64,000 nt of DNA from Macrostomum lignano (GCA_002269645.1 NIVC01000741.1:323206-387205), one strand, 5' to 3'. Numbered from the stretch's first letter, positions 3,560-64,000 are shown. Notes: a model not told the origin generated them from the sequence alone. Numbers and translations are program-made.

Positions 3560-3560
3560 A

Positions 3561-22168: not shown

Positions 22169-22269
22169 GAAGTCCAGAAACGCTGCAAAAGTAAAATGCA
22201 CCATTGTGAATGCTTTGAGATACTTGGGGACTGCTTTCTGAAGGACCAGGAAGTAACAGGTAACAGCTC

Positions 22270-27723: not shown

Positions 27724-28636
27724 CTGTAAAGCTGGGCGCCGATCTCGACTTCGCATGAGGATGGACTGCTGAAAATCGCGTGCCAGAATATTCGATGAGA
27801 TCGAGCCCAGGACCTCGGCAGGTGAATCTTGAGGCAAGATATGGGGCAACTATGAGCCAAGACAAAGCTGGAGACCGGGCAAAAAGGCCTCGAGAATCCG
27901 CAGGATTCGACTCGAGAGAGAGAAAGAGGAGGGAAGGACCTCTAAATATTGTATGGCCAAAATAGACATCGAACCAATGACCTCCTAAAACTAGTATTAG
28001 TAGGTATAGTATCGAGCTTTGACCTTTGACAATTCAATTGACAACATAAGAGTTCGAGCCTAGGACCCCTAGAATTGTATGCACAGACTAGAGATGGGAG
28101 CCAAAAGTAAAACAAAAAATACGAAAGAATTGGCAAAACCACAAGAACAAGCAATGTCTGCTTTTATTAAAGAAACAGTAAACTGACCATAATCGGCGAG
28201 AATGCATATGAAAATCACCGCCAGCCAGCAGGTGCCAACCGCACTGGCCGCTCAATATTACATTTGTCTGGGCGCACCTGGGCTCGATTAAGTTGAGCAT
28301 ACTACTGACAAGCCTGCACAAAATAGTAGTAACGTACTAAAGCAAACTCACTAGAGCTCCAAAAACTACCAAATCAAGAAAATAAATTCGCGTACTTCAG
28401 TTCCTAAGTTGGGAAATTGAAATTAGAAAGCGGTTGCACCAGAACCAGCAATTTCAACTGAGGAGCTTCGAAGTTAGCCCTTGAATAAAATTGGCGAAAC
28501 GTAAGCATTAGAAGGACTGCGATGGATAGTGGACAGGCGAATTACAAATGAGGGCGCATTAAACAATGAACACAGGTGGTCTGGGACCTTTTGTGCTCAG
28601 AAAATTTAACTTTGTATAAAGTTCACGATGTGACAA

Positions 28637-31600: not shown

Positions 31601-33720
31601 TAGCAGAGAGGATTCTGGTGTAACTGGGGAGATCTCCACGATGAGACAGAGGATTCTGGAGTAACTGGGGCGACCTCAATGATGTAGCAGAGAGGATTCT
31701 GGTGTAACTGGGGAGATCTCCACGATGAGACAGAGGATTCTGGAGTAACTGGGGCGATCTACGTGATGTGGCGGATAGGATTCTGGAGTAACTGGGGCGA
31801 CCTCAATGATGTAGCAGAGAGGATTCTGGTGTAACTGGGGAGATCTCCACGATGAGACAGAGGATTCTGGAGTAACTGGGGCGACCTCAATGATGTAGCA
31901 GAGAGGATTCTGGAGTAACTGGGGCGATCTACGTGATGTGGCGGATAGGATTCTGGAGTAACTGGGGCGACCTCAATGATGTAGCAGAGAGGATTCTGGT
32001 GTAACTGGGGAGATCTCCACGATGAGACAGAGGATTCTGGAGTAACTGGGGCGACCTCAATGATGTAGCAGAGAGGATTCTGGAGTAGCTGGGGCGACCT
32101 CAATGATGCAGCAGAGAGGATTCTGGTGTAACTGGGGAGATCTCCACGATGAGACAGAGGATTCTGGAGTAACTGGGGCGACCTCAATGATGTAGCAGAG
32201 AGGATTCTGGAGTAACTGGGGCGACCTCAATGATGTAGCAGAGAGGATTCTGGTGTAACTGGGGAGATCTCCACGATGAGACAGATGATTCTGGAGTAAC
32301 TGGGGCGATCTACGTGATGTGGCGGAGAGGATTCTGGAGTAGCTGGGGCGACCTCAATGATGTAGCAGAGAGGATTCTGGTGTAACTGGGGAGATCTCCA
32401 CGATGAGACAGAGGATTCTGGAGTAACTGGGGCGACCTCAATGATGTAGCAGAGAGGATTCTGGTGTAACTAGGGAGATCTCCACGATGAGACAGATGAT
32501 TCTGGAGTAACTGGGGCGATCTACGTGATGTGGCGGAGAGGATTCTGGAGTAGCTGGGGCGACCTCAATGATGTAGCAGAGAGGATTCTGGTGTAACTAA
32601 GGAGATCTCCACGATGAGACAGATGATTCTGGAGTAACTGGGGCGACCTCAATGATGTAGCAGAGAGGATTCTGGTGTAACTGGGGAGATCTCCACGATG
32701 AGACAGAGGATTCTGGAGTAACTGGGGCTACCTCAATGATGTAGCAGAGAGGATTCTGGCGTAACTGGGGCGACCTCAATGATGTAGCAGAGAGGATTCT
32801 GATGTAACTGGGGAGATCTCCACGATGAGACAGAGGATTCTGGAGTAACTGGGGCGATCTACGTGATGTGGCGGATAGGATTCTGGAGTAACTGGGGCGA
32901 CCTCAATGATGTAGCAGAGAGGATTCTGGTGTAACTGGGGAGATCTCCACGATGAGACAGAGGATTCTGGAGTAACTGGGGCGACCTCAATGATGTAGCA
33001 GAGAGGATTCTGGAGTAACTGGGGCGATCTACGTGATGTGGCGGATAGGATTCTGGAGTAACTGGGGCGACCTCAATGATGTAGCAGAGAGGATTCTGGT
33101 GTAACTGGGGAGATCTCCACGATGAGACAGATGATTCTGGAGTAACTGGGGCGATCTACGTGATGTGGCGGAGAGGATTCTGGAGTAGCTGGGGCGACCT
33201 CAATGATGTAGCAGAGAGGATTCTGGTGTAACTGGGGAGATCTCCACGATGAGACAGAGGATTCTGGAGTAACTGGGGCGACCTCAATGATGTAGCAGAG
33301 AGGATTCTGGTGTAACTAGGGAGATCTCCACGATGAGACAGATGATTCTGGAGTAACTGGGGCGATCTACGTGATGTGGCGGAGAGGATTCTGGAGTAGC
33401 TGGGGCGACCTCAATGATGTAGCAGAGAGGATTCTGGTGTAACTAGGGAGATCTCCACGATGAGACAGATGATTCTGGAGTAACTGGGGCGATCTACGTG
33501 ATGTGGCGGAGAGGATTCTGGAGTAACTGGGGCGACCTCAATGATGTAGCAGAGAGGATTCTGGAGTAGCTGGGGCGACCTCAATGATGCAGCAGAGAGG
33601 ATTCTGGTGTAACTGGGGAGATCTCCACGATGAGACAGAGGATTCTGGAGTAACTGGCGCGATCTACGTGATATGGCGGAGAGGATTCTGGAGTAACTGG
33701 GGCGATCTCCGTGATGTGGG
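28637..33720. repeat. 5.1-kb satellite of related 43/41/43-bp monomers with a 1102-bp higher-order repeat
   Basis: Monomers share AGGATTCTGGAGTAACTGGGG and end in CGACCTCAATGATGTAGCAGAG (A), AGATCTCCACGATGAGACAG (B) or CGATCTACGTGATGTGGCGGAT (C). Identical ORFs recur at 29007/30109/31211 and 29555/30657/31759. Confidence 0.96.
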
Positions 33721-46303: not shown

Positions 46304-47850
46304 CATGGCGTCGCCATGGATTTTATGGTGGGGGGGGGACAAAGCCAAGAATCCAACATGTTCATGTACATGACTAAATTTTGGCACTCATTTTGGCGTC
46401 ACAGGGACTCCTTTTGGCGCCGCAGGCACTCATTTCGGCACCGCAAGCATTCCTTTTAACGCCGCAGGCACTCATTTTAGCGCCTCAAGGCACTCATTTT
46501 AGCGCCGCAGGCACTCATTTTAGCGCCTCAAGGCACTCATTTTAGCGCCTCAAGGCACTCATTTTAGCGCCGCAGGCACTCATTTTAGCGCCTTAAGGCA
46601 CTCATTTTAGCGCCTCAAAGCACTCATTTTAGCGCCTCAGGCATTCATTTTAGCGTCTTAAGTCACTCATTCTAGCGCCTCAGGCACTCATTTTAGCGTC
46701 GCAGGCACTCATTTTAGCGCCTCAAGGCACTCATTTTAGCGCCTCAAAGCACTCATTTTAGCGCCGCAGGCACTTATTTTGGCGCCTCAAGGCACTCATT
46801 TTAGCGCCTCAAAGCACTCATTTTAGCGCCTCAAAGCACTCATTTTAGCGCCGCAGGCACTCATTTTAGCGCCTCAAGTCACTCATTTTAGCGCCGCAGG
46901 CACTCATTTTAGCGCCTCAAGGCACTCATTTTAGCGCCGCAGGCACTCATTTTGGCGCCACAGGCACTCATTTTAGCGCCGCAGGCACTCATTTTAGCGC
47001 CTCAAGGCACTCATTTTAGCGCCTCAAGGCACTCATTTTAGCGCCTCAAGGCACTCATTTTAGCGCCGCAGGCACTCATTTTTGCGCCACAGGTACTCAT
47101 TTTAGCGCCGCAGGCACTCATTTTGGCGCCGCAGGCACTCATTTTGGCGCCACAGGCACTCATTTTGGCGCCACAGGCACTCATTTTAGCGCCGCAGGCA
47201 CTCATTTTGGCGCCACAGGCACTCATTTTAGCGCCTCAAGGCACTCATTTTAGCGCCGCAGGCACTCATTTTAGCGCCGCAGGCACTCATTTTAGCGCCG
47301 CAGTCACTCATTTTAGCGCCTCAGGCACTCATTTTAGCGCCGCAGTCACTCATTTTAGCGCCTCAGGCACTCATTTTAGCGCCGCAGTCACTCATTTTAG
47401 CGCCTCAGGCACTCATTTTAGCGCCTCAAGGCACTCACTTTAGCGCCGCAGGCACTCATTTTGGCGCCTCAAGGCACTCACTTTAGCGCCGCAGGCACTC
47501 ATTTTAGCGCCGCAGGCACTCATTTTAGCGCCGCAGTCACTCATTTTAGCGCCTCAGGCACTCATTTTAGCGCCGCAGTCACTCATTTTAGCGCCTCAGG
47601 CACTCATTTTAGCGCCGCAGTCACTCATTTTAGCGCCTCAGGCACTCATTTTAGCGCCTCAAGGCACTCACTTTAGCGCCGCAGGCACTCATTTTGGCGC
47701 CGAAGTCGCTGTATTCTGGCGCCCTGAAGAAACATTATTGATTACCACAACGACTCACAAGGTGGGGAGAGACAAAACATTGGCATGTCCCCCCAGAGCT
47801 TTTACTGGGGGGGACATGTCCCCCCTGTCCCCCCGGTGGTGACGCGCCTG
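46304..47850. mobile_element. hAT-like MITE whose interior is a 21/22-bp minisatellite
   Basis: Ends CATGGCGTCGCCA / TGGTGACGCGCCTG, with G- and C-run subterminal motifs; flanks ATTGCAGT / GTTACAGT (6/8, decayed TSD). Confidence 0.6.
46380..47715. repeat. 21/22-bp minisatellite (GGCACTCATTTTAGCGCCGCA / ...GCCTCAA), about 60 units
   Basis: Direct reading. Confidence 0.96.
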
Positions 47851-48720: not shown

Positions 48721-49030
48721 AATTAAATATCGCAGAGTTCACACTAAAACAATTAAATATCGCAGAGTTCACACTAAAACAATTAAATATCGCAGAGTTC
48801 ACACTAAAACAATTAAATATCGCAGAGTTCACACTAAAACAATTAAATATCGCAGAGTTCACACTAAAACAATTAAATATCGCAGAGTTCACACTAAAAC
48901 AATTAAATATCGCAGAGTTCACACTAAAACAATTAAATATCGCAGAGTTCACACTAAAACAATTAAATATCGCAGAGTTCACACTAAAACAATTAAATAT
49001 CGCAGAGTTCACACTAAAACAATTAAATAT
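48721..49030. repeat. Perfect 30-bp tandem repeat x10 (AATTAAATATCGCAGAGTTCACACTAAAAC)
   Basis: Direct reading; no variants seen. Confidence 0.97.
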
Positions 49031-49981
49031 TGTTTCTGATTTCCGTCCTCTTTTAGTCGAAAACTGATCAGGCGGCGCGGCCGGTGGACCCGCCGGCGGA
49101 ATTCTCAGCTGTCGGCCCCGCCACCGGGTCGTAAAAACGAACTCTTCCTGCGAATATGGCGCAATTTTTTCACGTTTTGCGCAGCGACTTGATCCAAAGA
49201 AAACCCGGTTTAAACAATCCCCGATGCCAGAGGAACTCGTGAAACTCACTGAATGTCTTGAAGGTTTTAATACTCATAGGTCATAACCCACCATTGGCAT
49301 GTCTAGTCGGAAGTGACAGAACTTGTGCAAACCAGGCAATGTGTTGGATAAATTGGTAAGTTTAAATTTCTTCAGATTTAATTTTTGAAAAAATGCGACA
49401 TTCAACTTTGGCAAAAGCGGACGAATTTTGGCAACACGGTCATCTGAAAGGCAAACTGTAACAAACGAACGAGAAAGGCAAGATACAAACAGAAGAGTAG
49501 TCAATGTCACTGCTTCATTGATCCAGATGTTACTTTTGAAGTCATTCAAAAAGCATTCGCTATCAATGTCATTGACACTGGCGAGCGTAGTCAAGACAGC
49601 GGGGTCCATAGCTCAGCACGTACGCTCGTAATCGTGCCAATTCCGACATTTTTCGGAGGTGATGAAACTAGATGACGCTGCCTCTACTTGAGCCATCAGA
49701 ATAGTGAGGCGACGATGTTGTAACGTCTCACCAGATTGCGCTGCAGTCTGCCTGTCCTCAAGCTCGTGCACTGGGTCAGTTCCTCTTTCAGATCATCCTT
49801 CGCAATTCGCCCACTTTTGCCAAAGTTGAATGCACGCTTTAACTGATGATAACCATAGGCATATTGCCCGAAGGTTATTATATTATCAATGGGCTTGCCA
49901 AAATTAAGGTCAATTTTGCCAAAGTCGAAAATGAAATGGTATACTACAAGCAATTAACACAATAACTGAGTGAAACCCAAC

Positions 49982-50361
49982 CTGCCGTGTACGGCTCCTC
50001 AGTCCTATACGGCGTGTGAAGATTCGGTTCACGTTTCCGCCACCTGATGTGCACGATGTAGACCTGTGCAGTGGAGCATTGGTGAATCATTACAAATCTT
50101 CAGAATAACTATAAACTTATTAACTTCATTTCTTTTAATATCAATCAATAAGGCTTACGGAGACAAAAATGATGAGCACAAAGAGGAAAAGTCCACCAAT
50201 AACCGCCACCAGAATAATAAGGACAGTGTAATCCTGAGACGGAGTTGCAGTGACTCTGGTTGCTGTTGTGCCAGCCATGACACTTCCCGTTGTGGATGCT
50301 GCCTGTGCTGTTGTTTCGATGGCTGCAACAGAAGAGCTCGTACCGGCAAGGGTCGTAACAG
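49982..50361 (-). CDS. Juxtamembrane, TM and cytoplasmic exons of the mucin (50361-50159, 50063-49982)
   Basis: Phase-1 join from the SEA exon gives AVTTLAG...QDYTVLIILVAVIGGLFLFVLIIFVS|VYIVHIRWRKREPNLHTPY; hydrophobic span followed by a basic stop-transfer. Confidence 0.8.
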
Positions 50362-53300
50362 CTGAGGTGTCGTGACAGAAAAATTGTTACAAAAAATAAA
50401 TTTCTAGGTTAATATTTAAGCCGCTACTTACCAGAAGATCCAACGTTATCGACAATGACACCGCCCAGATCCGTCGCTTTAAGACTTTCAGAAAGAAGTT
50501 TAATAATAGCATCGGCCGTGTTTGTCAGCGTGTCTCGAACCACAAGGTTTCCACTGATAACAACACTTCCCGACTTAAACTGTAAGTTTACTGCATTTTG
50601 CAGTTCACCATTAAGCGAAGTTGACCTGGATGATTTCATAATGGTCTCGAAGGCGTAGTTAGCCAGCTGCTTGTAGCGCCAACTGTTCGGGTCTGCATAG
50701 TCATCGAACCACTGCAAATTTGAAAAGCGGAACGAGAACGGCACGGTCTTGACGTTCTTAAACACAGGCTGGTAGTTGGACGGACAGATGCAAGACGTCG
50801 TTGTGGGCGCAACAGTCGTAGTTGTAGTCGGAGTTGTAGTAGTGGTAGAGGTAGTCGTTGTTGTTGTGGTGCTTGTAGTTGGAGTAGTAGTAGTAGTTGT
50901 AGGGGTTGTAGAAGTCGTAGGAGTCGTTGTTGTAGATGTAGTAGTCGACGTTGTAGAAGTCGTCGTTGTCGACGTCGTTACAGGTTGAGTTTGACAGGCC
51001 GTAGACAGAGGCGCGAAACAGCCCTCAAGGCTCAGGAAGAATAAATAATTCGTTTCCAGCGACGAGCTGTTCAGTAGTGCGACTGGCGTGATTGCAATTC
51101 CTGTCGCGTTTGCTCCCAGAGTTATGCAAAGAGGAGTCAACGAAGACGAGACAGATACCAAATTGGATTCCAAGACAAGATCAAACCGACCGGTCGGATA
51201 AGTCGTCTGGGTAGACACTGTTACCTGCCTTACATTTCCTGTCACACAAACTCTCGTTAGGTATGTAGGAACAGGATTACATCCTCCAGCTGTCAAATCT
51301 ATGATAAGATCTCGTCTCGGACTCACTGGCATCTCGTATCGACCAGTTACATAAGTGGCGCCGGTAATGGCCCAATCAGGTATGTACTTTCTATCACTAA
51401 GGCCATTGAGTGCTGGACAAATTGTAGGCTTGACAGTAGTTGTAGACGTTGTTGTCGTTGACGTTGTCGTAGGAGTTGTAGTTGTGCTGGTAGTTGTAGG
51501 TGTTGTGGTGGTTGTTGAAGTAGTCGTCGGTGTTGTGGTAGTGCTACTAGTTTTCAAAGTTGTTGCGGTGGTTGTTGAAGTAGTGGTCGGAGTAGTAGTA
51601 GTAGTAGATGTTGTCGTAGTCAAGCAAATGTCTGGAACTCTTGTGAAGCAGCCGTTGATGATGAGGTACATCTGGAAATTTGTGCTCGTCGCTGAAGCTG
51701 TCTTAAGCGTGCGCGGCAAAATGATGAACTGAGCTACTGGAAAGCCGATGTCAAAGCACAGATCCGCCGCAGTGTCTGAGGATACCAAGCTAGCAAGATT
51801 TTGGAAAGGTGCCGCATAGAACTGCTTGTATCGAATCGTAGCCTCTCTAACGTTTCCGGAGAGACACAACTAGAAATTGTTGAAGAAAGAGACATTAATT
51901 TCTATTCTCAAACGGCAATCATATACCTAAAATTTGACCAGCTTTTTAAAGCTTACCCTATCAACATATATAGCAGTACGACAGTTTCTGACAGTAATAT
52001 CCACAGTCAAATATCCATCCGTTCCAGTGCGAATATTGAAGCCAGTAGCGTCGCTAAAGCTGGTGGCCCCTGTGATGGAATCCATCGGTAGCAGCAATGG
52101 GTCCGTCAGAGCATTAACCATTGGACAGACTAAAAATAAAGTTTAAAGAATACGAGTATTACACATAATTACCACAGATAATTCAGGGATGATAAGCAGC
52201 GAAGTCAAATGAAGCCAAAGAACAACTTTTCTTTGGGAAATATTAGTGCGAGAAACACAAAACAGGCCTGTTCGAGCGGCCGGCTAAATTTGTCATTCTT
52301 TTTCTTCACTTACAAGTGGTTCCAACAGTAGTAGTGGTCGTGGGGGTCGTGGTGGTTGTAGCTGCACTTGTGGTCGTGCTTGACGTGGTTGTGCTAGTGC
52401 TTGTCGTCGTGCTGGTCGTTGTGCTGGTTGTTGGAGTGCATCCTGGAATCGGCATGAAGCAGCCATACACCGACAGGAAGAAGTTGTAAGTGCTAGATCC
52501 GGTGGCTGCAGAAGACTTCAGTTCCTTCGGTGCGATGATGATAGAGCTCACGTTGAAGTTCAGGTCGTAGCACAGCAGTCCTGGACCGTCTTGAATAATA
52601 GTTGTGGACTGAACCAGTGGCAGGTAGGGCACCGATGCCGATGTCTGGTAGATGAGGTCAGCTTTCTTTACATTGCCACCGATAAGACAAACCTAAAATG
52701 CATGAAAATTTCGATTAGAGATTGAATCTTGACAAGCTTTCACTGACAAATAAAATAACAATGCTACAGAGCCTAATTGTACCTGTGTGATATATTCTGG
52801 TCTGCGGCAGTTGTTGGATGTCAAATCGATGAAAAGTCCTTCGCCGGGTGCTCTAGACATTGTGTAGCCCAAGACAGAAGAGAATGTTGCTCCACTGATG
52901 GCCCAGGAAGGCAGCAACGATGGATCAGCGATCGCATCGACAGCAGGACAAACTAAAAGTAATTACCGCGATTCAGATGACACTAGATTCAGCAAACTAA
53001 CGAAGAAGTAAAATTTGACTTTACTCGTGTAAGTTGCTTACAAGTTGGTTTAGGGGTAGTAGAAGTAGTGGTTGTTGATGTGGTCGAGGTAGTTGGCGTA
53101 GTTGTAGCAGTCGACGAGGTGGTCGCTGTAGTTGTAGAACTTGTTGATGTTGTCAATGTGCTTGAAGTTGGAGTAGAGGTCGAAGTTGTTGGAGATTTAG
53201 TCGATGCGCTGGTTGTTGGAGTCGTCGTTGTGGGTGTTGCAGTCGTCGTACTCGTTGTCGTTGAAGTCGTGGTTGAAGTTGTCGTTGGAGTAGTAGTTGT

Positions 53301-56300
53301 GGTGGTAGTCGTTGGAGTCGTGAGGCAGGCGCCTGTTAGCGGCGTGAAGCAGGCATCGACTCTAACAAAGAAATTGAACATACTTTCGGTCGAGAACGAT
53401 TTGAGTCGCAGAGGCACAATTGCTATTTTAGCTACAGTCTCTTTGTTGAGAACTGTGTAGCACCACGGACTCGTAGTGTCAACTGAGATGCTCGAAGCAG
53501 ACAAATCAGGCGAGTACTTTTCAGTGCTTAATCTTGCAAACAGCAAGTTGGCTTCTCGCACGTTACCAATCAGACAAATCTGAAAGAATAAGCGGACATT
53601 CCAGTGTATGGAAACATGTGAGGAAAATATAGTTCAAGACACGTCATAAATGACATACAAACGCGTACCCTATCAACGACTATTGGCGGCCGACATGAGT
53701 TTACAGTCAGATCAATCTCAAGGCTTCCGTTCTTCAGAGGAAGTCTGTAGCCATAGAATGGGTCGTATTCTCCACCAGTTACAGCGAATGAAGGAATCAA
53801 GTTGGACTGGTAGAAGCCGTCAATAGCACAAGACGTTGTGGTTTCCAGTGTTGTGGTCAGAGTAGTTCTTGTTGTCGTCGATGTCGTAGTGCTGGTCGTT
53901 GGAGTCGTCGTAGTGGTAGTTGTAGTCGGTGTAGTTGTAGTAGTGCTTGTTGTAACAGTAGTCGGCGTGGTCGGCGTTGTAGTAGTTGTAGTCGTGCTGG
54001 TAGTGCTGGTGCTGGTCGTTGTGGTCGGCGTGGTCAGACACGTGGAGTTAAGAGGATTGATGCAGGCCATGAGAGACACGAAGAACTGGTACTCGGTTGA
54101 GTTGTAGCCAGGCTTTGTAGCTTGAGGAACAATCATTAGTTCAGAGGTGAGTCTATTAAGATCATAGCACAGAGGATCTCCAGTTGAAGAAGTCTTTCCT
54201 GGCGTGTTGAAGTCGGGTACCAGTTTGTCGCTGGTTGGCTCTCGGATCAAGATTTGTGCATTGAACACGTTTCCAGCGATGCACAGCTGCAATCACAATC
54301 GTTGACGATTAGTTAGATTAATGTTATATACGAGCGTAGTTACTAAGCGAGTAAGCATATCCATATCGAAAACAGGAATACAACATCTAAACTTTACCCT
54401 TGAAATCACAGCAGCGGGTCGGCAGCCAAAGACAGTAAGATCGATTTTCAATGCGGCTTTGAGGGGAAGAATGTATCCAAAAAGCTCTCTGTATGTGCCA
54501 CCAGTGACTGCGAATGATGGCAGCAAGTCCGAGCGACTGAAGGCATCAACGAGGCATGCTGAAAATCAAGTAGTCAGTTTGCACAAATGATTAATCGCAT
54601 CTTGTAAGCTGGGTTTCCAAAGAAACTCGAGAACTAAAACTAAAAAGTTTCTTTTTAAACGTTGTTTTAACTTACAAGTAGTAGTAGTCGGGGTTGTTAT
54701 TGTAGTTGTTGGAGTCGTCGTCACAGTCGTGGTGGGCGTAGTTGTAGTTGTAGTAGTGGTAGGTGTAGTTGTTGTAGTGGAAGTCGAAGAGGTGCTTGTC
54801 GATGTTGGCGTTGTTGTAGTTGTAGATGACGTTGGTAGAGTAGTTGGCGTTGTGGTTGTTGAAGTTGTTGTTGGTGTACTTGTTGTGCTTGTTGACGTAC
54901 TTGTGGTAGGCGTGGTAGTTGCTGTGGTTGTCGTGGTTGTAGTCGTTGTGGTTGTTGGTGTTGTTTGACATGTGTCGTTAAGCGGCAAAAAGCAAGCTCG
55001 TATAGTCAAGAAAAACTGATAGTTCGTTGCAGGAGCTCGAAGAGCAGTAGGCTTGACTTGGAGCTCAACCATGTCGATGTTCAAATTGTAGCACAGTTGA
55101 GAGCTACTAGTTTCATAGTTTATTGAGTCGGCGAAGATAACCGGATAGTCGGAATATGTTCTTCGATATATTACGTTTGCCATCTTCACATTACCTCCAA
55201 TTAGACAAACCTGTAATAATGAGAATCAGGGAAGCCGTGCCGGTTTTGATGAACCAAAAATGTTTAGTAGTGACTTAAAACTGACCTGCGCTTTTCCTAG
55301 AATCTTATTTATTTTTCTAGTGTTGAAGCTACCTACATAACAAAGGCACTACAGTGCAAAAGCAAAATAAAATATAACAAAATTGTGGTTTAATAGACTT
55401 TCACTGTTAAGCCAGAGAAGATTAAAAATAAAAGCTGCGTCATCTTTCGTTGTACCCTATTATACATACCTGATAAACAGTCAAGGCTCCCCGGCATCCA
55501 CGAGCTGTGAGGTCAATCGCTATGTATCCACCGCTGGAAACTGGAATGTTCCAGCCAGTAGCGCCGTCAAACGTCGCACCAGTGATCGTAAATTGCGGCA
55601 AGTACACAGGACTCGATAAACCATTAACGACGGGACAAACTGTAATGAACGTGAAAATGTCTTATTTATTAAGTTATTAATACACTACTTCTCGAATACA
55701 GCTCTCAATAACAATTGAGCACTTAAAAGAATCATGTAACGATCTATTTACTTGTTGTGGGCACTGTTGTAGTACTTGTACTTGTCAGAGTAGTTGTAGT
55801 GGTAGTGGTCGACGTTGTCGGCGTAGTTGTGTGTGGTTGTTGTGGGTGTTGTAGTTGTTGTAGTGGTCGTTGTTGTCGGAGTTGTCAAGCAGGTATTATT
55901 CAAAGGTGTGAAGCAAGCCTTGATTGTGATGTAAGCTCGAAATGCCGTGTCGGAGCTGAAAGCGCTCTTCAACTGTTGCGGTGAGATGCGCACACCAGTG
56001 AGCATCATTCCTGTAGGCGGAGTGAAGCACAACGGATCGGAAACCCCAGTAGCTGACTGGCTTGCAGACGGAAGATTCGGACTGAATGGTCCTCCGTATG
56101 TAGTTTGATACAGGATGTAGGAACTCTGAATGTTTCCTAGTAGACAAATCTGCAAAAACCGTTGTGTGGTACACAATGTGCATTGTCTAGTGGTATGTCT
56201 GAAATGTATTAGCAAAGTGTCACGTTGTAACGAAATTCCTGCTCAATACTCACGCTCTCAACAGTAATTGGCATGCGGCAGCCAAACACGGAGATGTCCA

Positions 56301-59300
56301 CTGTCATTGCGTAGGTACCACCAGTTCGAATCATGTACCCTGAAACAGTGTAATTGGCTCCACTGACTGCAAATGATGGAATAAAGCGCTCATCCGACAA
56401 GCCATCAACTGCACATGAAGGCGTAGTTGTAGTAGCAGTGGTCGTTGTGCTCGTCGTCGTGCTCGTCGTTGATGTCGACGTGGTGGGTGTAGTTGTCGCT
56501 GTTGATGTTGTCGTCGGTGTAGTCGCAGTCGTTGTTGTGCTCGTCGAAGTGGTTGGTGTTGAAGTTGTCGTTGAGGTAGTCGTCGTAGTACACGATACTG
56601 GCAGAGGAGTGAAACAGGCCTCGATGGAAAGGAAAAACTGATACAACGAATCGCCTGAGGCTGCGCTTTTAAACTCTTTCGGAACAATTCTCAGCTCGGA
56701 AATGGGAAGCATTGGGTAGTAGCACAGCGGTGTAGCAGTGTCACTTGTATTGTACAGCGACTGCTCGAAGAAGTCCCAGTAGAGGGTGGAGCCTTGACGG
56801 ATGATAAGATCAGCTCGTTTTACATTACCGCCGAACAGACAAATCTAAAACGGAACGCATCTAATTTTAGCATTTGAAATTGCTATTTTATTTAAATATC
56901 AAGAAAAGAACAAGTTACATACCCTATTAATTAGGATCGGTGTGCGGCAACCGGATACAGAAATGTCCACATAGACGCCTTCCACTGAGCCTCTGGGTAC
57001 ATTATATCCTGTTAACGGATTATAACTAGGAGCATTGATAGAAGAACTAGGAATCAAGACGCCGTTGAGTCCGTTCACCAAACAGGATGTTGTTGTCGAC
57101 GGAGTGGTTGTAGTAGTGCTAGTTGCTGTTGTGGTCGATGTCGGCGTTGTGCTAGTAGTTGTGGGAGTTGTTGTTGTGGATGAAGTAGTCGACGTTGTAG
57201 AAGTCGTTACAGGTTGAGTTTGACAGGCCGTAGACAGAGGCGCGAAACAGCCCTCAAGGCTCAGGAAGAATAAATAATTCGTTTCCAGCGACGAGCTGTT
57301 CAGTAGTGCGACTGGCGTGATTGCAATTCCTGTCGCGTTTGCTCCCAGAGTTATGCAAAGAGGAGTCAACGAAGACGAGACAGATACCAAATTGGATTCC
57401 AAGACAAGATCGAAACCGACCGGTCGGATAAGTCGTCTGGGTAGACACTGTTACCTGCCTTACATTTCCTGTCACACAAACTCTCGTTAGGTATGTAGGA
57501 ACAGGATTACATCCTCCAGCTGTCAAATCTATGATAAGATCTCGTCTCGGACTCACTGGCATCTCGTATCGACCAGTTACATAAGTGGCGCCGGTAATGG
57601 CCCAATCAGGTATGTACTTTCTATCACTAAGGCCATTGAGTGCTGGACAAATTGTAGGCTTGACAGTAGTTGTAGACGTTGTTGTCGTTGACGTTGTCGT
57701 AGGAGTTGTAGTTGTGCTGGTAGTTGTAGGTGTTGTAGTGGTTGTTGAAGTAGTCGTCGGTGTTGTGGTAGTGCTACTAGTTTTCAAAGTTGTTGCGGTG
57801 GTTGTTGAAGTAGTGGTCGGAGTAGTAGTAGTAGTAGATGTTGTCGTAGTCAAGCAAATGTCTGGAACTCTTGTGAAGCAGCCGTTGATGATGAGGTACA
57901 TCTGGAAATTTGTGCTCGTCGCTGAAGCTGTCTTAAGCGTGCGCGGCAAAATGATGAACTGAGCTACTGGAAAGCCGATGTCAAAGCACAGATCCGCCGC
58001 AGTGTCTGAGGATACCAAGCTAGCAAGATTTTGGAAAGGTGCCGCATAGAACTGCTTGTATCGAATCGTAGCCTCTCTAACGTTTCCGGAGAGACACAAC
58101 TAGAAATTGTTGAAGAAAGAGACATTAATTTCTATTCTCAAACGGCAATCATATACCTAAAATTTGACCAGCTTTTTAAAGCTTACCCTATCAACATATA
58201 TAGCAGTACGACAGTTTCTGACAGTAATATCCACAGTCAAATATCCATCCGTTCCAGTGCGAATATTGAAGCCAGTAGCGTCGCTAAAGCTGGTGGCCCC
58301 TGTGATGGAATCCATCGGTAGCAGCAATGGGTCCGTCAGAGCATTAACCATTGGACAGACTAAAAATAAAGTTTAAAGAATACGAGTATTACACATAATT
58401 ACCACAGATAATTCAGGGATGATAAGCAGCGAAGTCAAATGAAGCCAAAGAACAACTTTTCTTTGGGAAATATTAGTGCGAGAAACACAAAACAGGCCTG
58501 TTCGAGCGGCCGGCTAAATTTGTCATTCTTTTTCTTCACTTACAAGTGGTTCCAACAGTAGTAGTGGTCGTGGGGGTCGTGGTGGTTGTAGCTGCACTTG
58601 TGGTCGTGCTTGACGTGGTTGTGCTAGTGCTTGTCGTCGTGCTGGTCGTTGTGCTGGTTGTTGGAGTGCATCCTGGAATCGGCATGAAGCAGCCATACAC
58701 CGACAGGAAGAAGTTGTAAGTGCTAGATCCGGTGGCTGCAGAAGACTTCAGTTCCTTCGGTGCGATGATGATAGAGCTCACGTTGAAGTTCAGGTCGTAG
58801 CACAGCAGTCCTGGACCGTCTTGAATAATAGTTGTGGACTGAACCAGTGGCAGGTAGGGCACCGATGCCGATGTCTGGTAGATGAGGTCAGCTTTCTTTA
58901 CATTGCCACCGATAAGACAAACCTAAAATGCATGAAAATTTCGATTAGAGATTGAATCTTGACAAGCTTTCACTGACAAATAAAATAACAATGCTACAGA
59001 GCCTAATTGTACCTGTGTGATGTATTCTGGTCTGCGGCAGTTGTTGGATGTCAAATCGATGAAAAGTCCTTCGCCGGGTGCTCTAGACATTGTGTAGCCC
59101 AAGACAGAAGAGAATGTTGCTCCACTGATGGCCCAGGAAGGCAGCAACGATGGATCAGCGATCGCATCGACAGCAGGACAAACTAAAAGTAATTACCGCG
59201 ATTCAGATGACACTAGATTCAGCAAACTAACGAAGAAGTAAAATTTGACTTTACTCGTGTAAGTTGCTTACAAGTTGGTTTAGGGGTAGTAGAAGTAGTG

Positions 59301-62300
59301 GTTGTTGATGTGGTCGAGGTAGTTGGCGTAGTTGTAGCAGTCGACGTGGTGGTCGCTGTAGTTGTAGAACTTGTTGATGTTGTCAATGTGCTTGAAGTTG
59401 GAGTAGAGGTCGAAGTTGTTGGAGATTTAGTCGATGCGCTGGTTGTTGGAGTCGTCGTTGTGGGTGTTGTAGTCGTCGTACTCGTTGTCGTTGAAGTCGT
59501 GGTTGAAGTTGTCGTTGGAGTAGTAGTTGTGGTGGTAGTCGTTGGAGTCGTGAGGCAGGCGCCTGTTAGCGGCGTGAAGCAGGCATCGACTCTAACAAAG
59601 AAATTGAACATACTTTCGGTCGAGAACGATTTGAGTCGCAGAGGCACAATTGCTATTTTAGCTACAGTCTCTTTGTTGAGAACTGTGTAGCACCACGGAC
59701 TCGTAGTGTCAACTGAGATGCTCGAAGCAGACAAATCAGGCGAGTACTTTTCAGTGCTTAATCTTGCAAACAGCAAGTTGGCTTCTCGCACGTTACCAAT
59801 CAGACAAATCTGAAAGAATAAGCGGACATTCCAGTGTATGGAAACATGTGAGGAAAATATAGTTCAAGACACGTCATAAATGACATACAAACGCGTACCC
59901 TATCAACGACTATTGGCGGCCGACATGAGTTTACAGTCAGATCAATCTCAAGGCTTCCGTTCTTCAGAGGAAGTCTGTAGCCATAGAATGGGTCGTATTC
60001 TCCACCAGTTACAGCGAATGAAGGAATCAAGTTGGACTGGTAGAAGCCGTCAATAGCAAGACGTTGTGGTTTCCAGTGTTGTGGTCAGAGTAGTTCTTGT
60101 TGTCGTCGATGTCGTAGTGCTGGTCGTTGGAGTCGTCGTAGTGGTAGTTGTAGTCGGTGTAGTTGTAGTAGTGCTTGTTGTAACAGTAGTCGGCGTGGTC
60201 GGCGTTGTAGTAGTTGTAGTCGTGCTGGTAGTGCTGGTGCTGGTCGTTGTGGTCGGCGTGGTCAGACACGTGGAGTTAAGAGGATTGATGCAGGCCATGA
60301 GAGACACGAAGAACTGGTACTCGGTTGAGTTGTAGCCAGGCTTTGTAGCTTGAGGAACAATCATTAGTTCAGAGGTGAGTCTATTAAGATCATAGCACAG
60401 AGGATCTCCAGTTGAAGAAGTCTTTCCTGGCGTGTTGAAGTCGGGTACCAGTTTGTCGCTGGTTGGCTCTCGGATCAAGATTTGTGCATTGAACACGTTT
60501 CCAGCGATGCACAGCTGCAATCACGATCGTTGACGATTAGTTAGATTAATGTTATATACGAGCGTAGTTACTAAGCGAGTAAGCATATCCATGTCGAAAA
60601 CAGGAATACAACATCTAAACTTTACCCTTGAAATCACAGCAGCGGGTCGGCAGCCAAAGACAGTAAGATCGATTTTCAATGCGGCTTTGAGGGGAAGAAT
60701 GTATCCAAAAAGCTCTCTGTATGTGCCACCAGTGACTGCGAATGATGGCAGCAAGTCCGAGCGACTGAAGGCATCAACGAGGCATGCTGAAAATCAAGTA
60801 GTCAGTTTGCACAAATGATTAATCGCATCTTGTAAGCTGGGTTTCCAAAGAAACTCGAGAACTAAAACTAAAAAGTTTCTTTTTAAACGTTGTTTTAACT
60901 TACAAGTAGTAGTAGTCGGGTTGTTATTGTAGTTGTTGGAGTCGTCGTCACAGTCGTGGTGGGCGTAGTTGTAGTTGTAGTAGTGGTAGGTGTAGTTGTT
61001 GTAGTGGAAGTCGAAGAGGTGCTTGTCGATGTTGGCGTTGTTGTAGTTGTAGATGACGTTGGTAGAGTAGTTGGCGTTGTGGTTGTTGAAGTTGTTGTTG
61101 GTGTACTTGTTGTGCTTGTTGACGTACTTGTGGTAGGCGTGGTAGTTGCTGTGGTTGTCGTGGTTGTAGTCGTTGTGGTTGTTGGTGTTGTTTGACATGT
61201 GTCGTTAAGCGGCAAAAAGCAAGCTCGTATAGTCAAGAAAAACTGATAGTTCGTTGCAGGAGCTCGAAGAGCAGTAGGCTTGACTTGGAGCTCAACCATG
61301 TCGATGTTCAAATTGTAGCACAGTTGAGAGCTACTAGTTTCATAGTTTATTGAGTCGGCGAAGATAACCGGATAGTCGGAATATGTTCTTCGATATATTA
61401 CGTTTGCCATCTTCACATTACCTCCAATTAGACAAACCTGTAATAATGAGAATCAGGGAAGCCGTGCCAGTTTTGATGAACCAAAAATGTTTAGTAGTGA
61501 CTTAAAACTGACCTGCGCTTTTCCTAGAATCTTATTTATTTTTCTAGTGTTGAAGCTACCTACATAACAAAGGCACTACAGTGCAAAAGCAAAATAAAAT
61601 ATAACAAAATTGTGGTTTAATAGACTTTCACTGTTAAGCCAGAGAAGATTAAAAATAAAAGCTGCGTCATCTTTCGTTGTACCCTATTATACATACCTGA
61701 TAAACAGTCAAGGCTCCCCGGCATCCACGAGCTGTGAGGTCAATCGCTATGTATCCACCGCTGGAAACTGAATGTTCCAGCCAGTAGCGCCGTCAAACGT
61801 CGCACCAGTGATCGTAAATTGCGGCAAGTACACAGGACTCGATAAACCATTAACGACGGGACAAACTGTAATGAACGTGAAAATGTCTTATTTATTAAGT
61901 TATTAATACACTACTTCTCGAATACAGCTCTCAATAACAATTGAGCACTTAAAAGAATCATGTAACGATCTATTTACTTGTTGTGGGCACTGTTGTAGTA
62001 CTTGTACTTGTCAGAGTAGTTGTAGTGGTAGTGGTCGACGTTGTCGGCGTAGTTGTGTGGTTGTTGTGGGTGTTGTAGTTGTTGTAGTGGTCGTTGTTGT
62101 CGGAGTTGTCAAGCAGGTATTATTCAAAGGTGTGAAGCAAGCCTTGATTGTGATGTAAGCTCGAAATGCCGTGTCGGAGCTGAAAGCGCTCTTCAACTGT
62201 TGCGGTGAGATGCGCACACCAGTGAGCATCATTCCTGTAGGCGGAGTGAAGCACAACGGATCGGAAACCCCAGTAGCTGACTGGCTTGCAGACGGAAGAT

Positions 62301-64000
62301 TCGGACTGAATGGTCCTCCGTATGTAGTTTGATACAGGATGTAGGAACTCTGAATGTTTCCTAGTAGACAAATCTGCAAAACCGTTGTGTGGTACACAAT
62401 GTGTATTGTCTAGTGGTATGTCTGAAATGTATTAGCAAAGTGTCACGTTGTAACGAAATTCCTGCTCAATACTCACGCTCTCAACAGTAATTGGCATGCG
62501 GCAGCCAAACACGGAGATGTCCACTGTCATTGCGTAGTACCACCAGTTCGAATCATGTACCCTGAACAGTGTAATTGGCTCCACTGACTGCAAATGATGG
62601 AATAAAGCGCTCATCCGACAAGCCATCAACTGCACATGAAGGCGTAGTTGTAGTAGCAGTGGTCGTTGTGCTCGTCGTCGTGCTCGTCGTTGATGTCGAC
62701 GTGGTGGGTGTAGTTGTCGCTGTTGATGTTGTCGTCGGTGTAGTCGCAGTCGTTGTTGTGCTCGTCGAAGTGGTTGGTGTTGAAGTTGTCGTTGAGGTAG
62801 TCGTCGTCGTAGTACACGATACTGGCAGAGGAGTGAAACAGGCCTCGATGGAAAGGAAAAACTGATACGAATCGCCTGAGGCTGCGCTTTTAAACTCTTT
62901 CGGAACAATTCTCAGCTCGGAAATGGGAAGCATTGGGTAGTAGCACAGCGGTGTAGCAGTGTCACTTGTATTGTACAGCGACTGCTCGAAGAAGTCCCAG
63001 TAGAGGGTGGAGCCTTGACGGATGATAAGATCAGCTCGTTTTACATTACCGCCGAACAGACAAATCTAAAACGGAACGCATCTAATTTTAGCATTTGAAA
63101 TTGCTATTTTATTTAAATATCAAGAAAAGAACAAGTTACATACCCTATTAATTAGGATCGGTGTGCGGCAACCGGATACAGAAATGTCCACATAGACGCC
63201 TTCCACTGAGCCTCTGGGTACATTATATCCTGTTAACGGATTATAACTAGGAGCATTGATAGAAGAACTAGGAATCAAGACGCCGTTGAGTCCGTTCACC
63301 AAACAGGATGTTGTTGTCGACGGAGTGGTTGTAGTAGTGCTAGTTGCTGTTGTGGTCGATGTCGGCGTTGTGCTAGTAGTTGTGGGAGTTGTTGTTGTGG
63401 ATGAAGTAGTCGACGTTGTAGAAGTCGTTACAGGTTGAGTTTGACAGGCCGTAGACAGAGGCGCGAAACAGCCCTCAAGGCTCAGGAAGAATAAATAATT
63501 CGTTTCCAGCGACGAGCTGTTCAGTCACGACTGGCGTGATTGCAATTCCTTCGCGTTTGCTCCCAGAGTTATGCAAAGAGGAGTCAACGAAGACGAGACA
63601 GATACCAAATTGGATTCCAAGACAAGATCAAACCGACCGGTCGGATAAGTCGTCTGGGTAGACACGTTACCTGCCTTACATTTCCTGTCACACAAACTCT
63701 CGTTAGGTATGTAGGAACAGGATTACATCCTCCAGCTGTCAAATCTATGATAAGATCTCGTCTCGGACTCACTGGCATCTCGTATCGACCAGTTACATAA
63801 GTGCGCCGGTAATGGCCCAATCAGGTATGTACTTTCTATCACTAAGGCCATTGAGTGCTGGACAAATTGTAGGCTTGACAGTAGTTGTAGACGTTGTTGT
63901 CGTTGACGTTGTCGTAGGAGTTGTAGTTGTGCTGGTAGTTGTAGGTGTTGTAGTGGTTGTTGAAGTAGTCGTCGGTGTGTGTAGTGCTACTAGTTGTAGT
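49982..64000 (-). CDS. 3' portion of a very large multi-exon type I membrane mucin: [Cys domain + Thr-rich linker] x >=17, SEA, TM, cytoplasmic tail; 5' end is outside the window and the last exon was not resolved
   Basis: Recurrent module C.....D...LP..AITG...L.IDLT..GC...|.C..GNV..A...Y...LCY...I.P..LK...F.L...C..PL...C followed by T/S/P tracts; short GT-AG introns; scattered 1-2-bp indels interrupt some copies. Confidence 0.85.
50432..50770 (-). CDS. SEA domain of the mucin
   Basis: VPFSFRFSNLQWFDDYADPNSWRYKQLA...LQFKSGSVVISGNL includes a GSVVV-like autoproteolysis motif (GSVVI, ~50557-50571). Confidence 0.8.
50975..64000. repeat. Intragenic tandem duplication with a ~6.22-6.23-kb unit, at least 2.1 copies
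   Basis: Identical ORFs offset by 6230 (51801/58031, 52306/58536, 52989/59219) and 6221 (56354/62575, 57035/63256); introns are also nearly identical. Confidence 0.95.

What the first reader, a model, noticed from the sequence alone, without database searches (positions are those of the whole stretch)
49982..64000. Giant membrane mucin with at least 17 divergent discoidin-like domains on Thr-rich stalks plus SEA
Seen: eight distinct ~130-aa six-Cys domain variants (A-H) recur in the order A-B-C-D-E-F-G-H-A..., each followed by a 40-100-aa T/S/P linker, ending in SEA (GSVVI), TM and an RWRKR tail. Inference: the pattern C..GL....IPD.AITG / L.IDL / V...GNV..V.Y / I.I.P / FL.LEGC echoes F5/8 type C (discoidin) domains (C..PLG..IPD..ITAS / LQIDL / IRI.P / LRLELYGC) but lacks their usual Trp residues and has an extra Cys pair. 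It may be an unannotated lectin-like family. I do not recognise a named protein with this beads-on-a-string architecture. It is a candidate epidermal glycocalyx, adhesion or microbe-binding protein.
Basis: partly seen in the sequence, partly recalled or inferred. Interest (0 to 1): 0.75.

Follow-up and report, generated by a model that had tools for sequence, protein, structure and literature searches.

The report
Flatworm membrane mucin with discoidin-like beads
The window ends in most of a Macrostomum lignano (flatworm) gene for a cell-surface mucin in which 17 small six-cysteine domains, shown here to have the discoidin (F5/8 type C) fold but absent from Pfam, alternate with threonine-rich stalks ahead of a SEA domain and a membrane anchor.

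Summary
On the minus strand, 63864-49944, there are 17 copies of a ~140-aa six-Cys domain. They alternate with 42-98-aa linkers (62-74% Thr). A Pfam-significant SEA domain (GSVVI), one membrane-spanning segment and an RWRKRE tail follow.

One correction: the 17 domains are eight old variants (31-39% identical) inside a very young 6.23-kb tandem super-repeat (99.4% identical, about 2.1 copies).

The discoidin idea holds at the level of fold. An AlphaFold model (pLDDT 85) matches muskelin, factor V/VIII C domains, neuropilin b1, lactadherin and CBM32 in Foldseek. Sequence support is weak: no Pfam or PDB hit, and profile-profile probability 37% (P 3.6e-4), though full-length and collinear.

The organism is Macrostomum lignano. 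Among 1.84 billion representative proteins only 14 match. Eight are M. lignano. The rest include a chiton "mucin-2-like" protein and unnamed eukaryotic contigs carrying a two-Cys version, also in tandem arrays.

Ligand, tissue and SEA cleavage are untested. As assembled, the frame is broken by scattered private 1-2-nt indels, which look like consensus errors.

Verdict: a real, unannotated, divergent discoidin-like family in a new mucin architecture. Moderately interesting.

The parts
49944..64000 (-). 3' part of the mucin gene: 17 modules, SEA, membrane-spanning segment and tail. The 5' end lies beyond 64000.
50952..57180 (-). Proximal 6.23-kb super-repeat unit. It holds D1(C-terminal end)-D2-D3-D4-D5-D6-D7-D8-D1.
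   Evidence: Self-BLAST 99.4% identity over 6835 nt, period 6229; differences listed
57181..63995 (-). Distal super-repeat unit plus the start of the next copy. It carries many private 1-2-nt deletions.
63444..63864 (-). Module D1, distal copy. No intron; frame broken by private indels.
   Evidence: alignment
62814..63305 (-). Module D2, distal copy
62113..62636 (-). Module D3, distal copy
61195..61863 (-). Module D4, distal copy
60266..60784 (-). Module D5, distal copy
59555..60060 (-). Module D6, distal copy
58665..59180 (-). Module D7, distal copy
57854..58357 (-). Module D8, distal copy
57223..57649 (-). Module D1, middle copy. A private extra base at 57412 shifts the frame.
56590..57084 (-). 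Module D2, proximal copy; phase-0 intron 56922-56845
55889..56415 (-). Module D3, proximal copy; intron 56253-56150. The public gene model PAA49141.1 uses the same junction.
54968..55637 (-). Module D4, proximal copy; intron 55469-55211
54038..54556 (-). Module D5, proximal copy; intron 54397-54287
53325..53830 (-). Module D6, proximal copy; intron 53668-53580
52435..52950 (-). Module D7, proximal copy; intron 52782-52693
51624..52127 (-). Module D8, proximal copy; intron 51956-51870
50994..51419 (-). Terminal module D1: intact, no intron, 154-bit match to the profile. This is the sequence modelled with AlphaFold2.
50472..50744 (-). SEA domain (PF01390), with the GSVVI autoproteolysis-type motif at about 50570-50556
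50159..50361 (-). Exon for a Ser/Thr/Ala-rich juxtamembrane stretch and most of the membrane-spanning segment (YTVLIILVAVIGGLFLFVLIIFVS)
   Evidence: introns 50431-50362 and 50158-50064, both GTAAG...CAG
49944..50063 (-). Last exon: end of the membrane-spanning segment (VYIVHI), RWRKRE stop-transfer signal, 33-aa cytoplasmic tail, and stop codon TAG at 49946-49944
55750..55888 (-). D3-D4 Thr-rich linker holding a (CA)n length slip at ~55829. The 5' and 3' halves are out of frame with each other. The distal copy (~62053) differs by one CA unit and is also out of frame.

Best explanation
This is the 3' roughly two-thirds of a Macrostomum lignano gene for a type-I, SEA-anchored transmembrane mucin.

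Its ectodomain is a string of compact, disulfide-stabilised beta-barrel modules of the discoidin (F5/8 type C, galactose-binding-domain-like) fold. Each module is separated from the next by a 42-98-residue Thr/Ser/Pro stalk.

Shown here:
- The module, linker, SEA, membrane-spanning and tail anatomy, with an in-frame GT-AG exon structure.
- The discoidin-like predicted fold.
- Eight positional variants arranged inside a very recent 6.2-kb tandem duplication.
- A paralogue (A0A1I8G2V1) with the same order of variants, a signal peptide, SEA and a membrane-spanning segment.
- The family is absent from Pfam and very rare in public protein space.

Inferred:
- The stalks are densely O-glycosylated and stiff, so they hold the modules away from the membrane as a brush.
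- The SEA domain self-cleaves at G|SVVI, so the huge ectodomain is held non-covalently and can be shed under force, as in MUC1, MUC3, MUC12, MUC13, MUC16 and MUC17.
- The modules bind ligands (glycans, other mucins, lipids or microbial surfaces) through the variable loops at one end of the barrel, as discoidin domains and CBM32 do.
- The eight or more long-maintained variants give different specificities, or a defined order of interactions.
- The recent duplication of the eight-module unit simply lengthens the molecule.

Combining the window with an older-assembly contig, the whole gene is probably: signal peptide, six further modules, two units of D1-D8, D1, SEA, membrane-spanning segment. 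That is about 23 modules.
For: - Anatomy.
- SEA: E 3.8e-9, above the Pfam cutoff.
- Fold: AF2 pLDDT 85.2, pTM 0.81. The Foldseek PDB hit list is dominated by discoidin/F5-8C/CBM32-type domains (top hits E 5e-5 to 1e-3, probability 1.00, TMq 0.5-0.63).
- Independent model of the distant two-Cys relative P0019: pLDDT 78, again hitting CASPR2 discoidin, neuropilin, FVIII C2, retinoschisin, discoidin II and CBM32.
- hhalign of the 20-sequence family alignment against an F5/8C alignment built from hits: 120 collinear columns from the first Cys to the GC motif, score 28.7, P 3.6e-4. Reversed and 30 column-shuffled controls score 11.6 or less.
- The only two Cys shared with the distant relatives (C1 and C5) align with the two canonical discoidin Cys.
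- Organism and paralogues.
- Paralogue collinearity: 33-54% identity to the positional counterpart, against 23-43% between positions.
- 5' end with a signal-like segment and six more modules on NIVC01003964.1.
- Intron position and phase are identical in seven of the eight variants.
- Discoidin domains are described as characteristic of lophotrochozoan mucin-like proteins (PMC4948705).
Against: - No sequence-level membership. PF00754 does not hit at E<=10, PDB profile searches are empty, the hhalign probability is only 37%, and the eight window variants alone give no signal.
- TM-scores of 0.5-0.63 with rmsd 4-7 A mean same fold class, not close similarity.
- The conserved discoidin Trp residues are mostly missing.
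- There is no expression, glycosylation, cleavage or binding data.
- The start codon and a verified signal peptide were not seen for this gene itself.
- As assembled, the reading frame is broken at 57412, in the D3-D4 linker of both units, and at about 12 places in the distal unit. An intact full-length product is therefore assumed, not shown.
- The copy number of the 6.2-kb unit could be mis-assembled.
Confidence: 0.78

Rival explanations
1. The modules are not receptors for outside ligands. They are structural knots or cross-linkers within the mucin layer, playing the role CysD domains play between the PTS stretches of MUC2, MUC5AC and MUC5B. They would set spacing, resist proteases and mediate mucin-mucin contacts.
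For: The layout is the same beads-between-PTS arrangement. Three disulfides sit in 140 residues. Variability is not concentrated in predicted loops: mean column entropy is 1.82 in strands against 1.80 elsewhere. That gives no sign of hypervariable binding loops.
Against: Discoidin and CBM32 relatives are almost all binding modules (hit list). Eight positional variants kept distinct since before a gene duplication suggests more than a generic spacer.
Confidence: 0.25
2. The array as seen is partly an artefact or a decaying gene. Either the 6.2-kb duplication (or its copy number) comes from assembling a repeat-rich, polyploid genome, or the internal units are truly frameshifted and the locus is a pseudogene.
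For: The units are 99.4% identical. About 18 indel events separate the copies, against about 10 substitutions. Both copies of the D3-D4 linker are out of frame. The older assembly's contig stops inside the repeat.
Against: The indels are private to each copy and to each assembly, at different positions. That is the signature of long-read consensus error, not shared mutation. Every exon between them is open and every intron keeps phase. The terminal 586 codons and the stretch from D4 to the stop codon are intact. Paralogues have the same architecture.
Confidence: 0.15
3. The module is not a homologue of discoidin domains. It is an independent or otherwise-related jelly-roll whose resemblance is only at the level of general fold, so discoidin biology is a poor guide.
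For: Sequence identity in structural alignments is 12-18%. There are no Pfam or PDB sequence hits. hhalign probability is 37%. The models are predictions from shallow alignments of eight sequences.
Against: Most of the top 50 Foldseek hits for two independent models are F5/8C/CBM32-type domains. The profile-profile alignment is end-to-end and collinear. It matches both canonical Cys and the IPD/ITASS, VDL, I.I.P and GC motifs, well above shuffled controls. The two-Cys relatives look more discoidin-like and bridge the gap.
Confidence: 0.12
4. It is a component of a secreted adhesive or reproductive material (for example temporary-adhesion glue, eggshell or sperm coat) rather than a general surface glycocalyx. 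The ectodomain would be released after SEA cleavage.
For: Marine invertebrate adhesive proteins often carry discoidin and other lectin-type domains together with glycosylated regions (general knowledge; papers listed). SEA cleavage permits shedding.
Against: A membrane-spanning segment with a basic stop-transfer signal and a cytoplasmic tail argues for a membrane-resident protein. Searches of the held literature for the gene identifier and for discoidin/SEA/mucin terms in flatworms turned up nothing on this gene or domain.
Confidence: 0.1

Closest known systems
F5/8 type C (discoidin) domains, Pfam PF00754: factor V/VIII C1-C2, lactadherin/MFG-E8, neuropilin b1/b2, CASPR2, retinoschisin, muskelin N-terminal domain, IFT25, bacterial CBM32
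   Same: Size is about 140-160 aa. The predicted beta-barrel fold is the same. A Cys at the very start and a Cys in the closing '..GC' motif are shared. The motif order is collinear: C..G[LM]..IPD..IT, then [IV]DL, then I.I.P, then L.[LV].GC.
   Different: It fails the Pfam model outright. It has two additional Cys pairs. The conserved Trp residues are largely absent. It is shorter in the loops. It occurs 17-23 times per protein, rather than once or twice.
Vertebrate SEA-type transmembrane mucins (MUC1, MUC3, MUC12, MUC13, MUC16, MUC17)
   Same: PTS stalks, a juxtamembrane SEA with a G|SVV-type motif, a single membrane-spanning segment and a short cytoplasmic tail. Tandem repeat units are very similar at the DNA level.
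   Different: The vertebrate mucins have an essentially uninterrupted PTS (MUC16 has repeated SEA; MUC3/12/13/17 have EGF domains flanking SEA). None has discoidin-type modules threaded through the PTS. No orthology is implied.
Gel-forming mucins with CysD domains between PTS blocks (MUC2, MUC5AC, MUC5B), and lophotrochozoan/arthropod VWD mucin-like proteins and hemolectin that carry F5_F8_type_C domains (Lang et al. 2016, PMC4948705)
   Same: Small Cys-rich globular beads interrupt the PTS. An association between discoidin domains and mucin-like proteins in Lophotrochozoa is already described. One distant relative (P0012) starts with a weak, sub-threshold match to the VWC domain (E 3e-4, 21.4 bits against a cutoff of 27.6).
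   Different: No VWD, C8, TIL or CK domains were seen here or in the paralogue P0001. The anchor is SEA plus a membrane-spanning segment, not secretion and polymerisation. The beads are a different fold from CysD.
Liolophura sinensis (chiton) 'mucin-2-like' XP_064614628.1, and unnamed tandem arrays on eukaryotic metagenome contigs (L002, L004)
   Same: Detectable sequence relatives of the module (E 5e-27 for the whole protein). They sit in tandem arrays: seven modules on P/T/S-rich linkers in the chiton protein, and 5 and 9 modules on the two contigs.
   Different: They are the two-Cys version, with a longer N-terminal half containing D.RP...W. No SEA or membrane-spanning segment was seen. Copies within an array are near-identical rather than forming eight old variants.

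Membership tests
F5/8 type C (discoidin) domain, Pfam PF00754 | Significant match to the family's sequence profile | tested here: not met
   No PF00754 hit at E<=10 for any of the eight variants, the 481-aa open frame, the paralogues or the distant relatives. A PDB sequence-profile search was empty at E<=10.
F5/8 type C (discoidin) domain, Pfam PF00754 | Distorted jelly-roll beta-barrel of about 150 residues | tested here: met
   AF2 pLDDT 85, pTM 0.81, nine strands. Foldseek top hits are 4oyu, 1czs, 8tn9, 1tvg, 8pfe and further discoidin/CBM32 entries, TMq 0.5-0.63, probability 1.00. This was repeated with a distant relative. These are predicted structures, not solved ones.
F5/8 type C (discoidin) domain, Pfam PF00754 | Remote homology by profile-profile comparison | tested here: inconclusive
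   hhalign of A2 against an F5/8C alignment: probability 36.8%, P 3.6e-4, 120 collinear columns. Controls score 11.6 or less against 28.7. A1 alone gives no signal.
F5/8 type C (discoidin) domain, Pfam PF00754 | Cys at the N-terminus and Cys at the C-terminus, which form the end-to-end disulfide | tested here: met
   C1 and C5 are invariant across all 20 family sequences and align with the two discoidin Cys.
F5/8 type C (discoidin) domain, Pfam PF00754 | Conserved aromatic core motifs (..AW.. / WLQVDL) | tested here: not met
   Only G-[YWF] remains at the first position, and [IV]DL without the Trp at the second.
F5/8 type C (discoidin) domain, Pfam PF00754 | Ligand binding through the loops at one end of the barrel | not testable with these tools
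   Needs recombinant protein. Column entropy shows no loop-specific hypervariability.
SEA-type transmembrane mucin | Long Pro/Thr/Ser-rich stretches | tested here: met
   Eight linkers of 42-98 aa, T+S+P 86-94%.
SEA-type transmembrane mucin | Juxtamembrane SEA domain | tested here: met
   PF01390, E 3.8e-9, 37.1 bits against a cutoff of 26.4, profile positions 3-95 of 106.
SEA-type transmembrane mucin | Autoproteolysis at G|S[VI]VV | not testable with these tools
   The motif FKSGSVVISG is present. Cleavage needs an experiment. The paralogues have GSVKA and GSVAF.
SEA-type transmembrane mucin | Single membrane-spanning segment followed by a cytoplasmic tail, giving type I topology | tested here: met
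   A hydrophobic run of 30 residues followed by RWRKRE and a 33-aa tail, read directly from the spliced frame. No dedicated membrane-segment predictor was available.
SEA-type transmembrane mucin | N-terminal signal peptide | tested here: inconclusive
   Outside the window. Contig NIVC01003964.1 has a hydrophobic '..AAALLAVLTLPVAG' segment before 'PFCSCVPLTTKYFF', but no start codon was located. The paralogue P0001 begins MPRRCLQTAFVALAACLLCAVQHAAC.
Gel-forming (VWD) mucins | VWD-C8-TIL assemblies and a C-terminal cystine knot | tested here: not met
   No such Pfam hits in the window's C-terminal 481 aa or in the full-length paralogue P0001.

The most novel reading that the evidence does not exclude
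The six-Cys module is a previously undescribed lectin or pattern-recognition family of spiralian animals. This gene would then be an ordered, combinatorial array of about 14 different specificities displayed on a shed-able mucin brush: a multivalent sensor or trap for microbes or substrate glycans at the flatworm surface. The order of variants would itself be functional, since it has been kept since before the paralogues split.
Probability: 0.25. Interest if true: 0.65.

Novelty: new variant of a known kind. Interest (0 to 1): 0.45.

Why it matters
It defines a domain family that Pfam does not cover and that exhaustive HMMER searching finds in only a handful of public proteins. It assigns that family to a known fold, so that "hypothetical protein" entries in Macrostomum, a chiton and unknown eukaryotes can be annotated.

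It also shows a mucin design not seen in vertebrates: discoidin-type binding modules threaded through the PTS of a SEA-anchored membrane mucin. M. lignano allows RNAi, in situ hybridisation and transgenesis, so the role of such a surface brush is directly testable there. Candidate roles are barrier, adhesion and interaction with microbes.

The locus is also a clear case of two-tier repeat evolution. Old divergent modules are kept in a fixed order, and a block of eight of them was duplicated very recently.

Tried and rejected
- Pfam at E<=10 on single variants, on all eight, and on eight relatives gave only noise: Hint, SOG2, PRCC, New_glue and various DUFs, all below cutoff.
- PDB sequence-profile searches with A1 and A2 were empty.
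- The word-indexed search with A1 found nothing. With A2 it found only eight short metagenomic proteins. The exhaustive representative search was what located the family.
- hhalign with the eight window variants alone gave no signal. Only the broader 20-sequence alignment did.
- Hit P0009, a 2219-aa bacterial repeat protein, is treated as spurious. It has many sub-threshold partial matches to profile positions ~2-56 only, and no shared Cys pattern.
- UniProt's automatic names for the paralogues ('ZP', 'PKD', 'CUB' and 'DUF3707 domain-containing') are not supported by Pfam scans of P0001, P0003, P0005 and P0015. P0010 ('CUB') was not scanned.
- I looked for hypervariable loops against conserved strands and found no difference.
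- I looked for an intron that would bypass the D3-D4 linker frameshift and found none with a credible donor. The cause is a CA-repeat length difference.
- Literature searches for the gene identifier and for discoidin+SEA+mucin in flatworms found nothing on this gene or domain.
- Disulfide pairing could not be read, because model coordinates are not exposed.

Full report
**What is in the sequence**

The feature lies on the minus strand and runs off the window at 64000. Stop-free segments in all three minus frames show a repeating pattern. It starts with a Cys-initiated N-half (C..[ND]G[LM]...[IL]P...[IV].G... [IV]D[LI][TS]...C). A short intron follows. Then comes a C-half (C[LI].GN[VI]... C ... 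I.[PV] ... [FY].[FL]... C[FI].P....C), and then a run of Thr/Ser/Pro.

Aligning the eight different versions gives a ~140-residue domain. It has six invariant Cys plus invariant P14, G26, D41, G61 and N62, and only 31-39% pairwise identity. A profile built from them hits the window 17 times. All hits are on the minus strand between 63864 and 50994, in the order D1-D8, D1-D8, D1, with none anywhere else.

The linkers are 42-98 aa with 62-74% Thr, 10-20% Ser and 5-10% Pro.

After the last module and linker comes a SEA domain (PF01390, E 3.8e-9, 37 bits against a cutoff of 26.4) with the motif FKSGSVVISG. Two GTAAG...CAG introns (70 and 95 nt) join it in frame to two further exons. The first encodes a Ser/Thr/Ala-rich stretch and a 30-residue hydrophobic segment. 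The second encodes RWRKRE and a 33-residue tail, ending at TAG 49946-49944.

**The repeat has two tiers**

Self-comparison shows that a 6.23-kb block containing all eight variants is tandemly duplicated at 99.4% identity (50952-57782 against 57181-63995). So the "17 domains" are eight old, divergent variants multiplied by a very recent block duplication, plus the terminal D1.

The two tiers have very different ages. Variants differ by 60-70% at the protein level, while blocks differ by 0.6% at the DNA level.

A paralogue in the same species, UniProt A0A1I8G2V1 (with A0A1I8... P0002 covering the same N-terminal region plus a D2-type module), carries one set of modules in the same order. Each of its modules is most similar to its positional counterpart: 33-54% identity, against 23-43% between different positions. 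The order of variants therefore predates the gene duplication and has been kept.

**Exon structure**

In seven of the eight variants a phase-0 intron sits one residue before the third Cys:
- D2: 56922/56845
- D3: 56253/56150
- D4: 55469/55211
- D5: 54397/54287
- D6: 53668/53580
- D7: 52782/52693
- D8: 51956/51870

D1 has lost this intron.

Four variants (D4, D5, D7, D8) have a second, phase-1 intron one residue before the first Cys. Exon lengths fit these phases: C-half-plus-linker exons are 1 mod 3, and N-half exons are 2 mod 3. All exons are open.

The public gene model PAA49141.1 uses the same D3 junction (ITVES|ICLLGN).

**Integrity**

As assembled the frame is not continuous. There are three kinds of break:
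- The middle D1 has a private extra base at 57412.
- The D3-D4 linker contains a (CA)n run whose length puts the two halves out of frame in both units, differently in each (~55829 and ~62053).
- The distal unit has about a dozen private 1-2-nt deletions.

The copies differ by more indel events than substitutions. An independent older-assembly copy of D1 has its own indel at yet another position.

This pattern fits long-read consensus error in a near-identical repeat, rather than shared inactivating mutations. From D4 of the proximal unit to the stop codon everything is intact. I treat the gene as probably functional, but this is an inference.

**Organism and the rest of the gene**

An exhaustive HMMER search of 1.84 billion representative proteins with the eight-variant profile found only 14 proteins. 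Cluster look-up shows that eight are from Macrostomum lignano. One of them, PAA49141.1 (BOX15_Mlig023086g3), closely matches modules D2-D3 of the window at the protein level. So the window is M. lignano.

The contig carrying that model is NIVC01003964.1, from assembly GCA_002269645.1. It matches the window's repeat at 98% and then ends inside it.

Upstream, that contig holds the following:
- a hydrophobic signal-like segment
- the motif PFCSCVPLTTKYFF, which is shared with the paralogue's N-terminus
- six further divergent modules (N1-N6)

The nine bases just upstream of the window's distal D1 linker match that contig's N6 linker, not the D8 linker. This suggests the window begins just after N6. 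The whole gene would then be: signal peptide, N1-N6, two units of D1-D8, D1, SEA, membrane-spanning segment. That makes about 23 modules. This rests on little sequence and on the two assemblies representing the same locus.

**What the module is**

Sequence methods alone say "unknown":
- No Pfam family hits at E<=10 for any variant, paralogue or distant relative.
- No PDB sequence match was found.

Structure prediction is informative. AlphaFold2 on D1, using the eight variants as its alignment, gives an all-beta model with pLDDT 85.2 and pTM 0.81. Foldseek against the PDB returns a hit list dominated by discoidin/F5-8C/CBM32-type domains:
- muskelin N-terminal discoidin domain (E 5e-5)
- factor V C2
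- factor VIII C1/C2
- HSPC034/IFT25
- neuropilin b1
- lactadherin C2
- CBM32 modules

For the top hits the probability is 1.00 and TMq is 0.5-0.63.

A second, independent model of a distant two-Cys relative (P0019, pLDDT 78) hits CASPR2 discoidin, neuropilin, FVIII C2, retinoschisin, MFG-E8, discoidin II and CBM32.

For a sequence-level test I built an F5/8C alignment from database proteins retrieved with the factor VIII C2 sequence. I compared profiles with hhalign. The 20-sequence family alignment aligns end to end with F5/8C over 120 columns. First Cys aligns to first Cys and GC to GC, with the IPD..IT, VDL and I.I.P motifs in register. The score is 28.7, P 3.6e-4, probability 37%. Reversed and 30 column-shuffled controls score at most 11.6.

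That is suggestive rather than conclusive. The eight window variants alone give nothing.

The two Cys that are invariant across the whole wider family (C1 and C5) are the ones that align with the canonical discoidin pair. The other four are a Macrostomum addition, so there are two extra pairs, not one.

My reading is that this is a highly divergent branch of the discoidin/galactose-binding-domain-like superfamily. It fails the Pfam family test but shares the fold and a faint collinear sequence signal.

**Relatives elsewhere**

Beyond M. lignano the profile finds:
- a chiton protein annotated "mucin-2-like" (Liolophura sinensis XP_064614628.1), with seven near-identical two-Cys modules on P/T/S-rich linkers
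- several proteins from metagenome assemblies

One of the metagenomic proteins (P0012) begins with a weak, sub-threshold VWC match and has His-rich linkers. Two of the contigs (GC 33-36%, clearly eukaryotic gene structure) carry 5 and 9 modules in tandem on one strand, roughly one per exon.

So the module typically occurs in arrays, and the beads-on-stalks design is not unique to Macrostomum. The six-Cys form and the SEA-plus-membrane anchor were seen only in M. lignano. One bacterial hit (P0009) is spurious.

**How it probably works**

By analogy with SEA-type membrane mucins (established knowledge for MUC1, MUC3, MUC12, MUC13, MUC16 and MUC17), the Thr-rich linkers should be densely O-glycosylated and extended. 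SEA should self-cleave at G|SVVI, giving a non-covalent heterodimer that can release the ectodomain under mechanical load.

By analogy with discoidin domains and CBM32, the modules should bind something through the loops at one end of the barrel. Candidates are glycans, phospholipid, collagen-like or mucin partners, or microbial surfaces.

None of this was tested. The only relevant computation, variability in loops against strands, showed no difference. That keeps open the rival view that the modules are structural knots or cross-linkers, like CysD domains.

The tissue is unknown. Searches of the held literature for the gene identifier and for discoidin/SEA/mucin terms in flatworms found nothing on this gene or domain.

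Lang et al. 2016 (PMC4948705) already noted that F5_F8_type_C domains are characteristic of lophotrochozoan VWD-type mucin-like proteins. A discoidin-mucin association in this clade therefore has precedent. A SEA-anchored version with 17-23 modules does not, as far as I could find.

**Verdict**

It is a new, divergent family within a known fold, set in a new variant of a known protein type (membrane mucin).

It is of moderate interest. It is useful for annotation and is a tractable model for invertebrate glycocalyx biology. It is not a new kind of system.

Noticed in passing
window 3893-7963 and 8364-12270 (+): Two adjacent Ty3/gypsy-type retroelement coding regions (zinc knuckle, aspartyl protease, RT, RNase H, integrase). 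Each is split into two or three open frames. The second is much more GC-rich (about 59%) than the first. They were only scanned piecewise with Pfam.
   Followed up: partly
window 28637-33717: A 5-kb minisatellite with a 43-bp unit, about 120 copies, 83-89% matches and strong G-over-C skew (0.28-0.37). The window as a whole is packed with 14-37-bp minisatellites, for example 2800-3562, 12488-13355, 19068-19476, 22264-22717, 23787-24514, 25117-25900 and 46383-47701.
   Followed up: no
window 18587-19941 (-), 23028-25048 (-), 26080-27849 (-): Three neighbouring host genes by Pfam. The first is a NUBP/Mrp-type P-loop NTPase (PF10609) in two exons. The second is a CSTF2-like gene (RRM, hinge, C-terminal domain). 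The third is a putative N6-adenine methyltransferase (PF10237). The open frame of the third reads straight through a 23-bp x 19 tandem repeat (26482-26920), which is probably intronic.
   Followed up: partly
window 48721-49030: A perfect (100%) 30-bp x 10.3 tandem repeat about 900 bp downstream of the mucin gene's stop codon.
   Followed up: no
L001 (NIVC01003964.1) 2813-3297 and 7501-7985: In the 5' part of the gene on the older assembly, modules N2 and N5 are 96% identical at the protein level. About 2 kb of non-module sequence lies between N3 and N4. This looks like a second recent internal duplication, or an assembly duplication, separate from the 6.2-kb unit.
   Followed up: partly
L002 (JGI 3300013843 Ga0181310_1090936) and L004 (ENA ERZ25069853 ctg28616l): AT-rich (33-36% GC) eukaryotic contigs from metagenome assemblies carry 5 and 9 tandem copies of the two-Cys version of the module on one strand. 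A prokaryotic gene caller split them into separate small 'genes'. The source organisms are unknown.
   Followed up: partly
window 57181-64000: The distal super-repeat unit has about 12 private 1-2-nt deletions in 6.2 kb, against two frame-breaking sites in the proximal unit. Consensus quality seems to drop towards this end of the window.
   Followed up: partly
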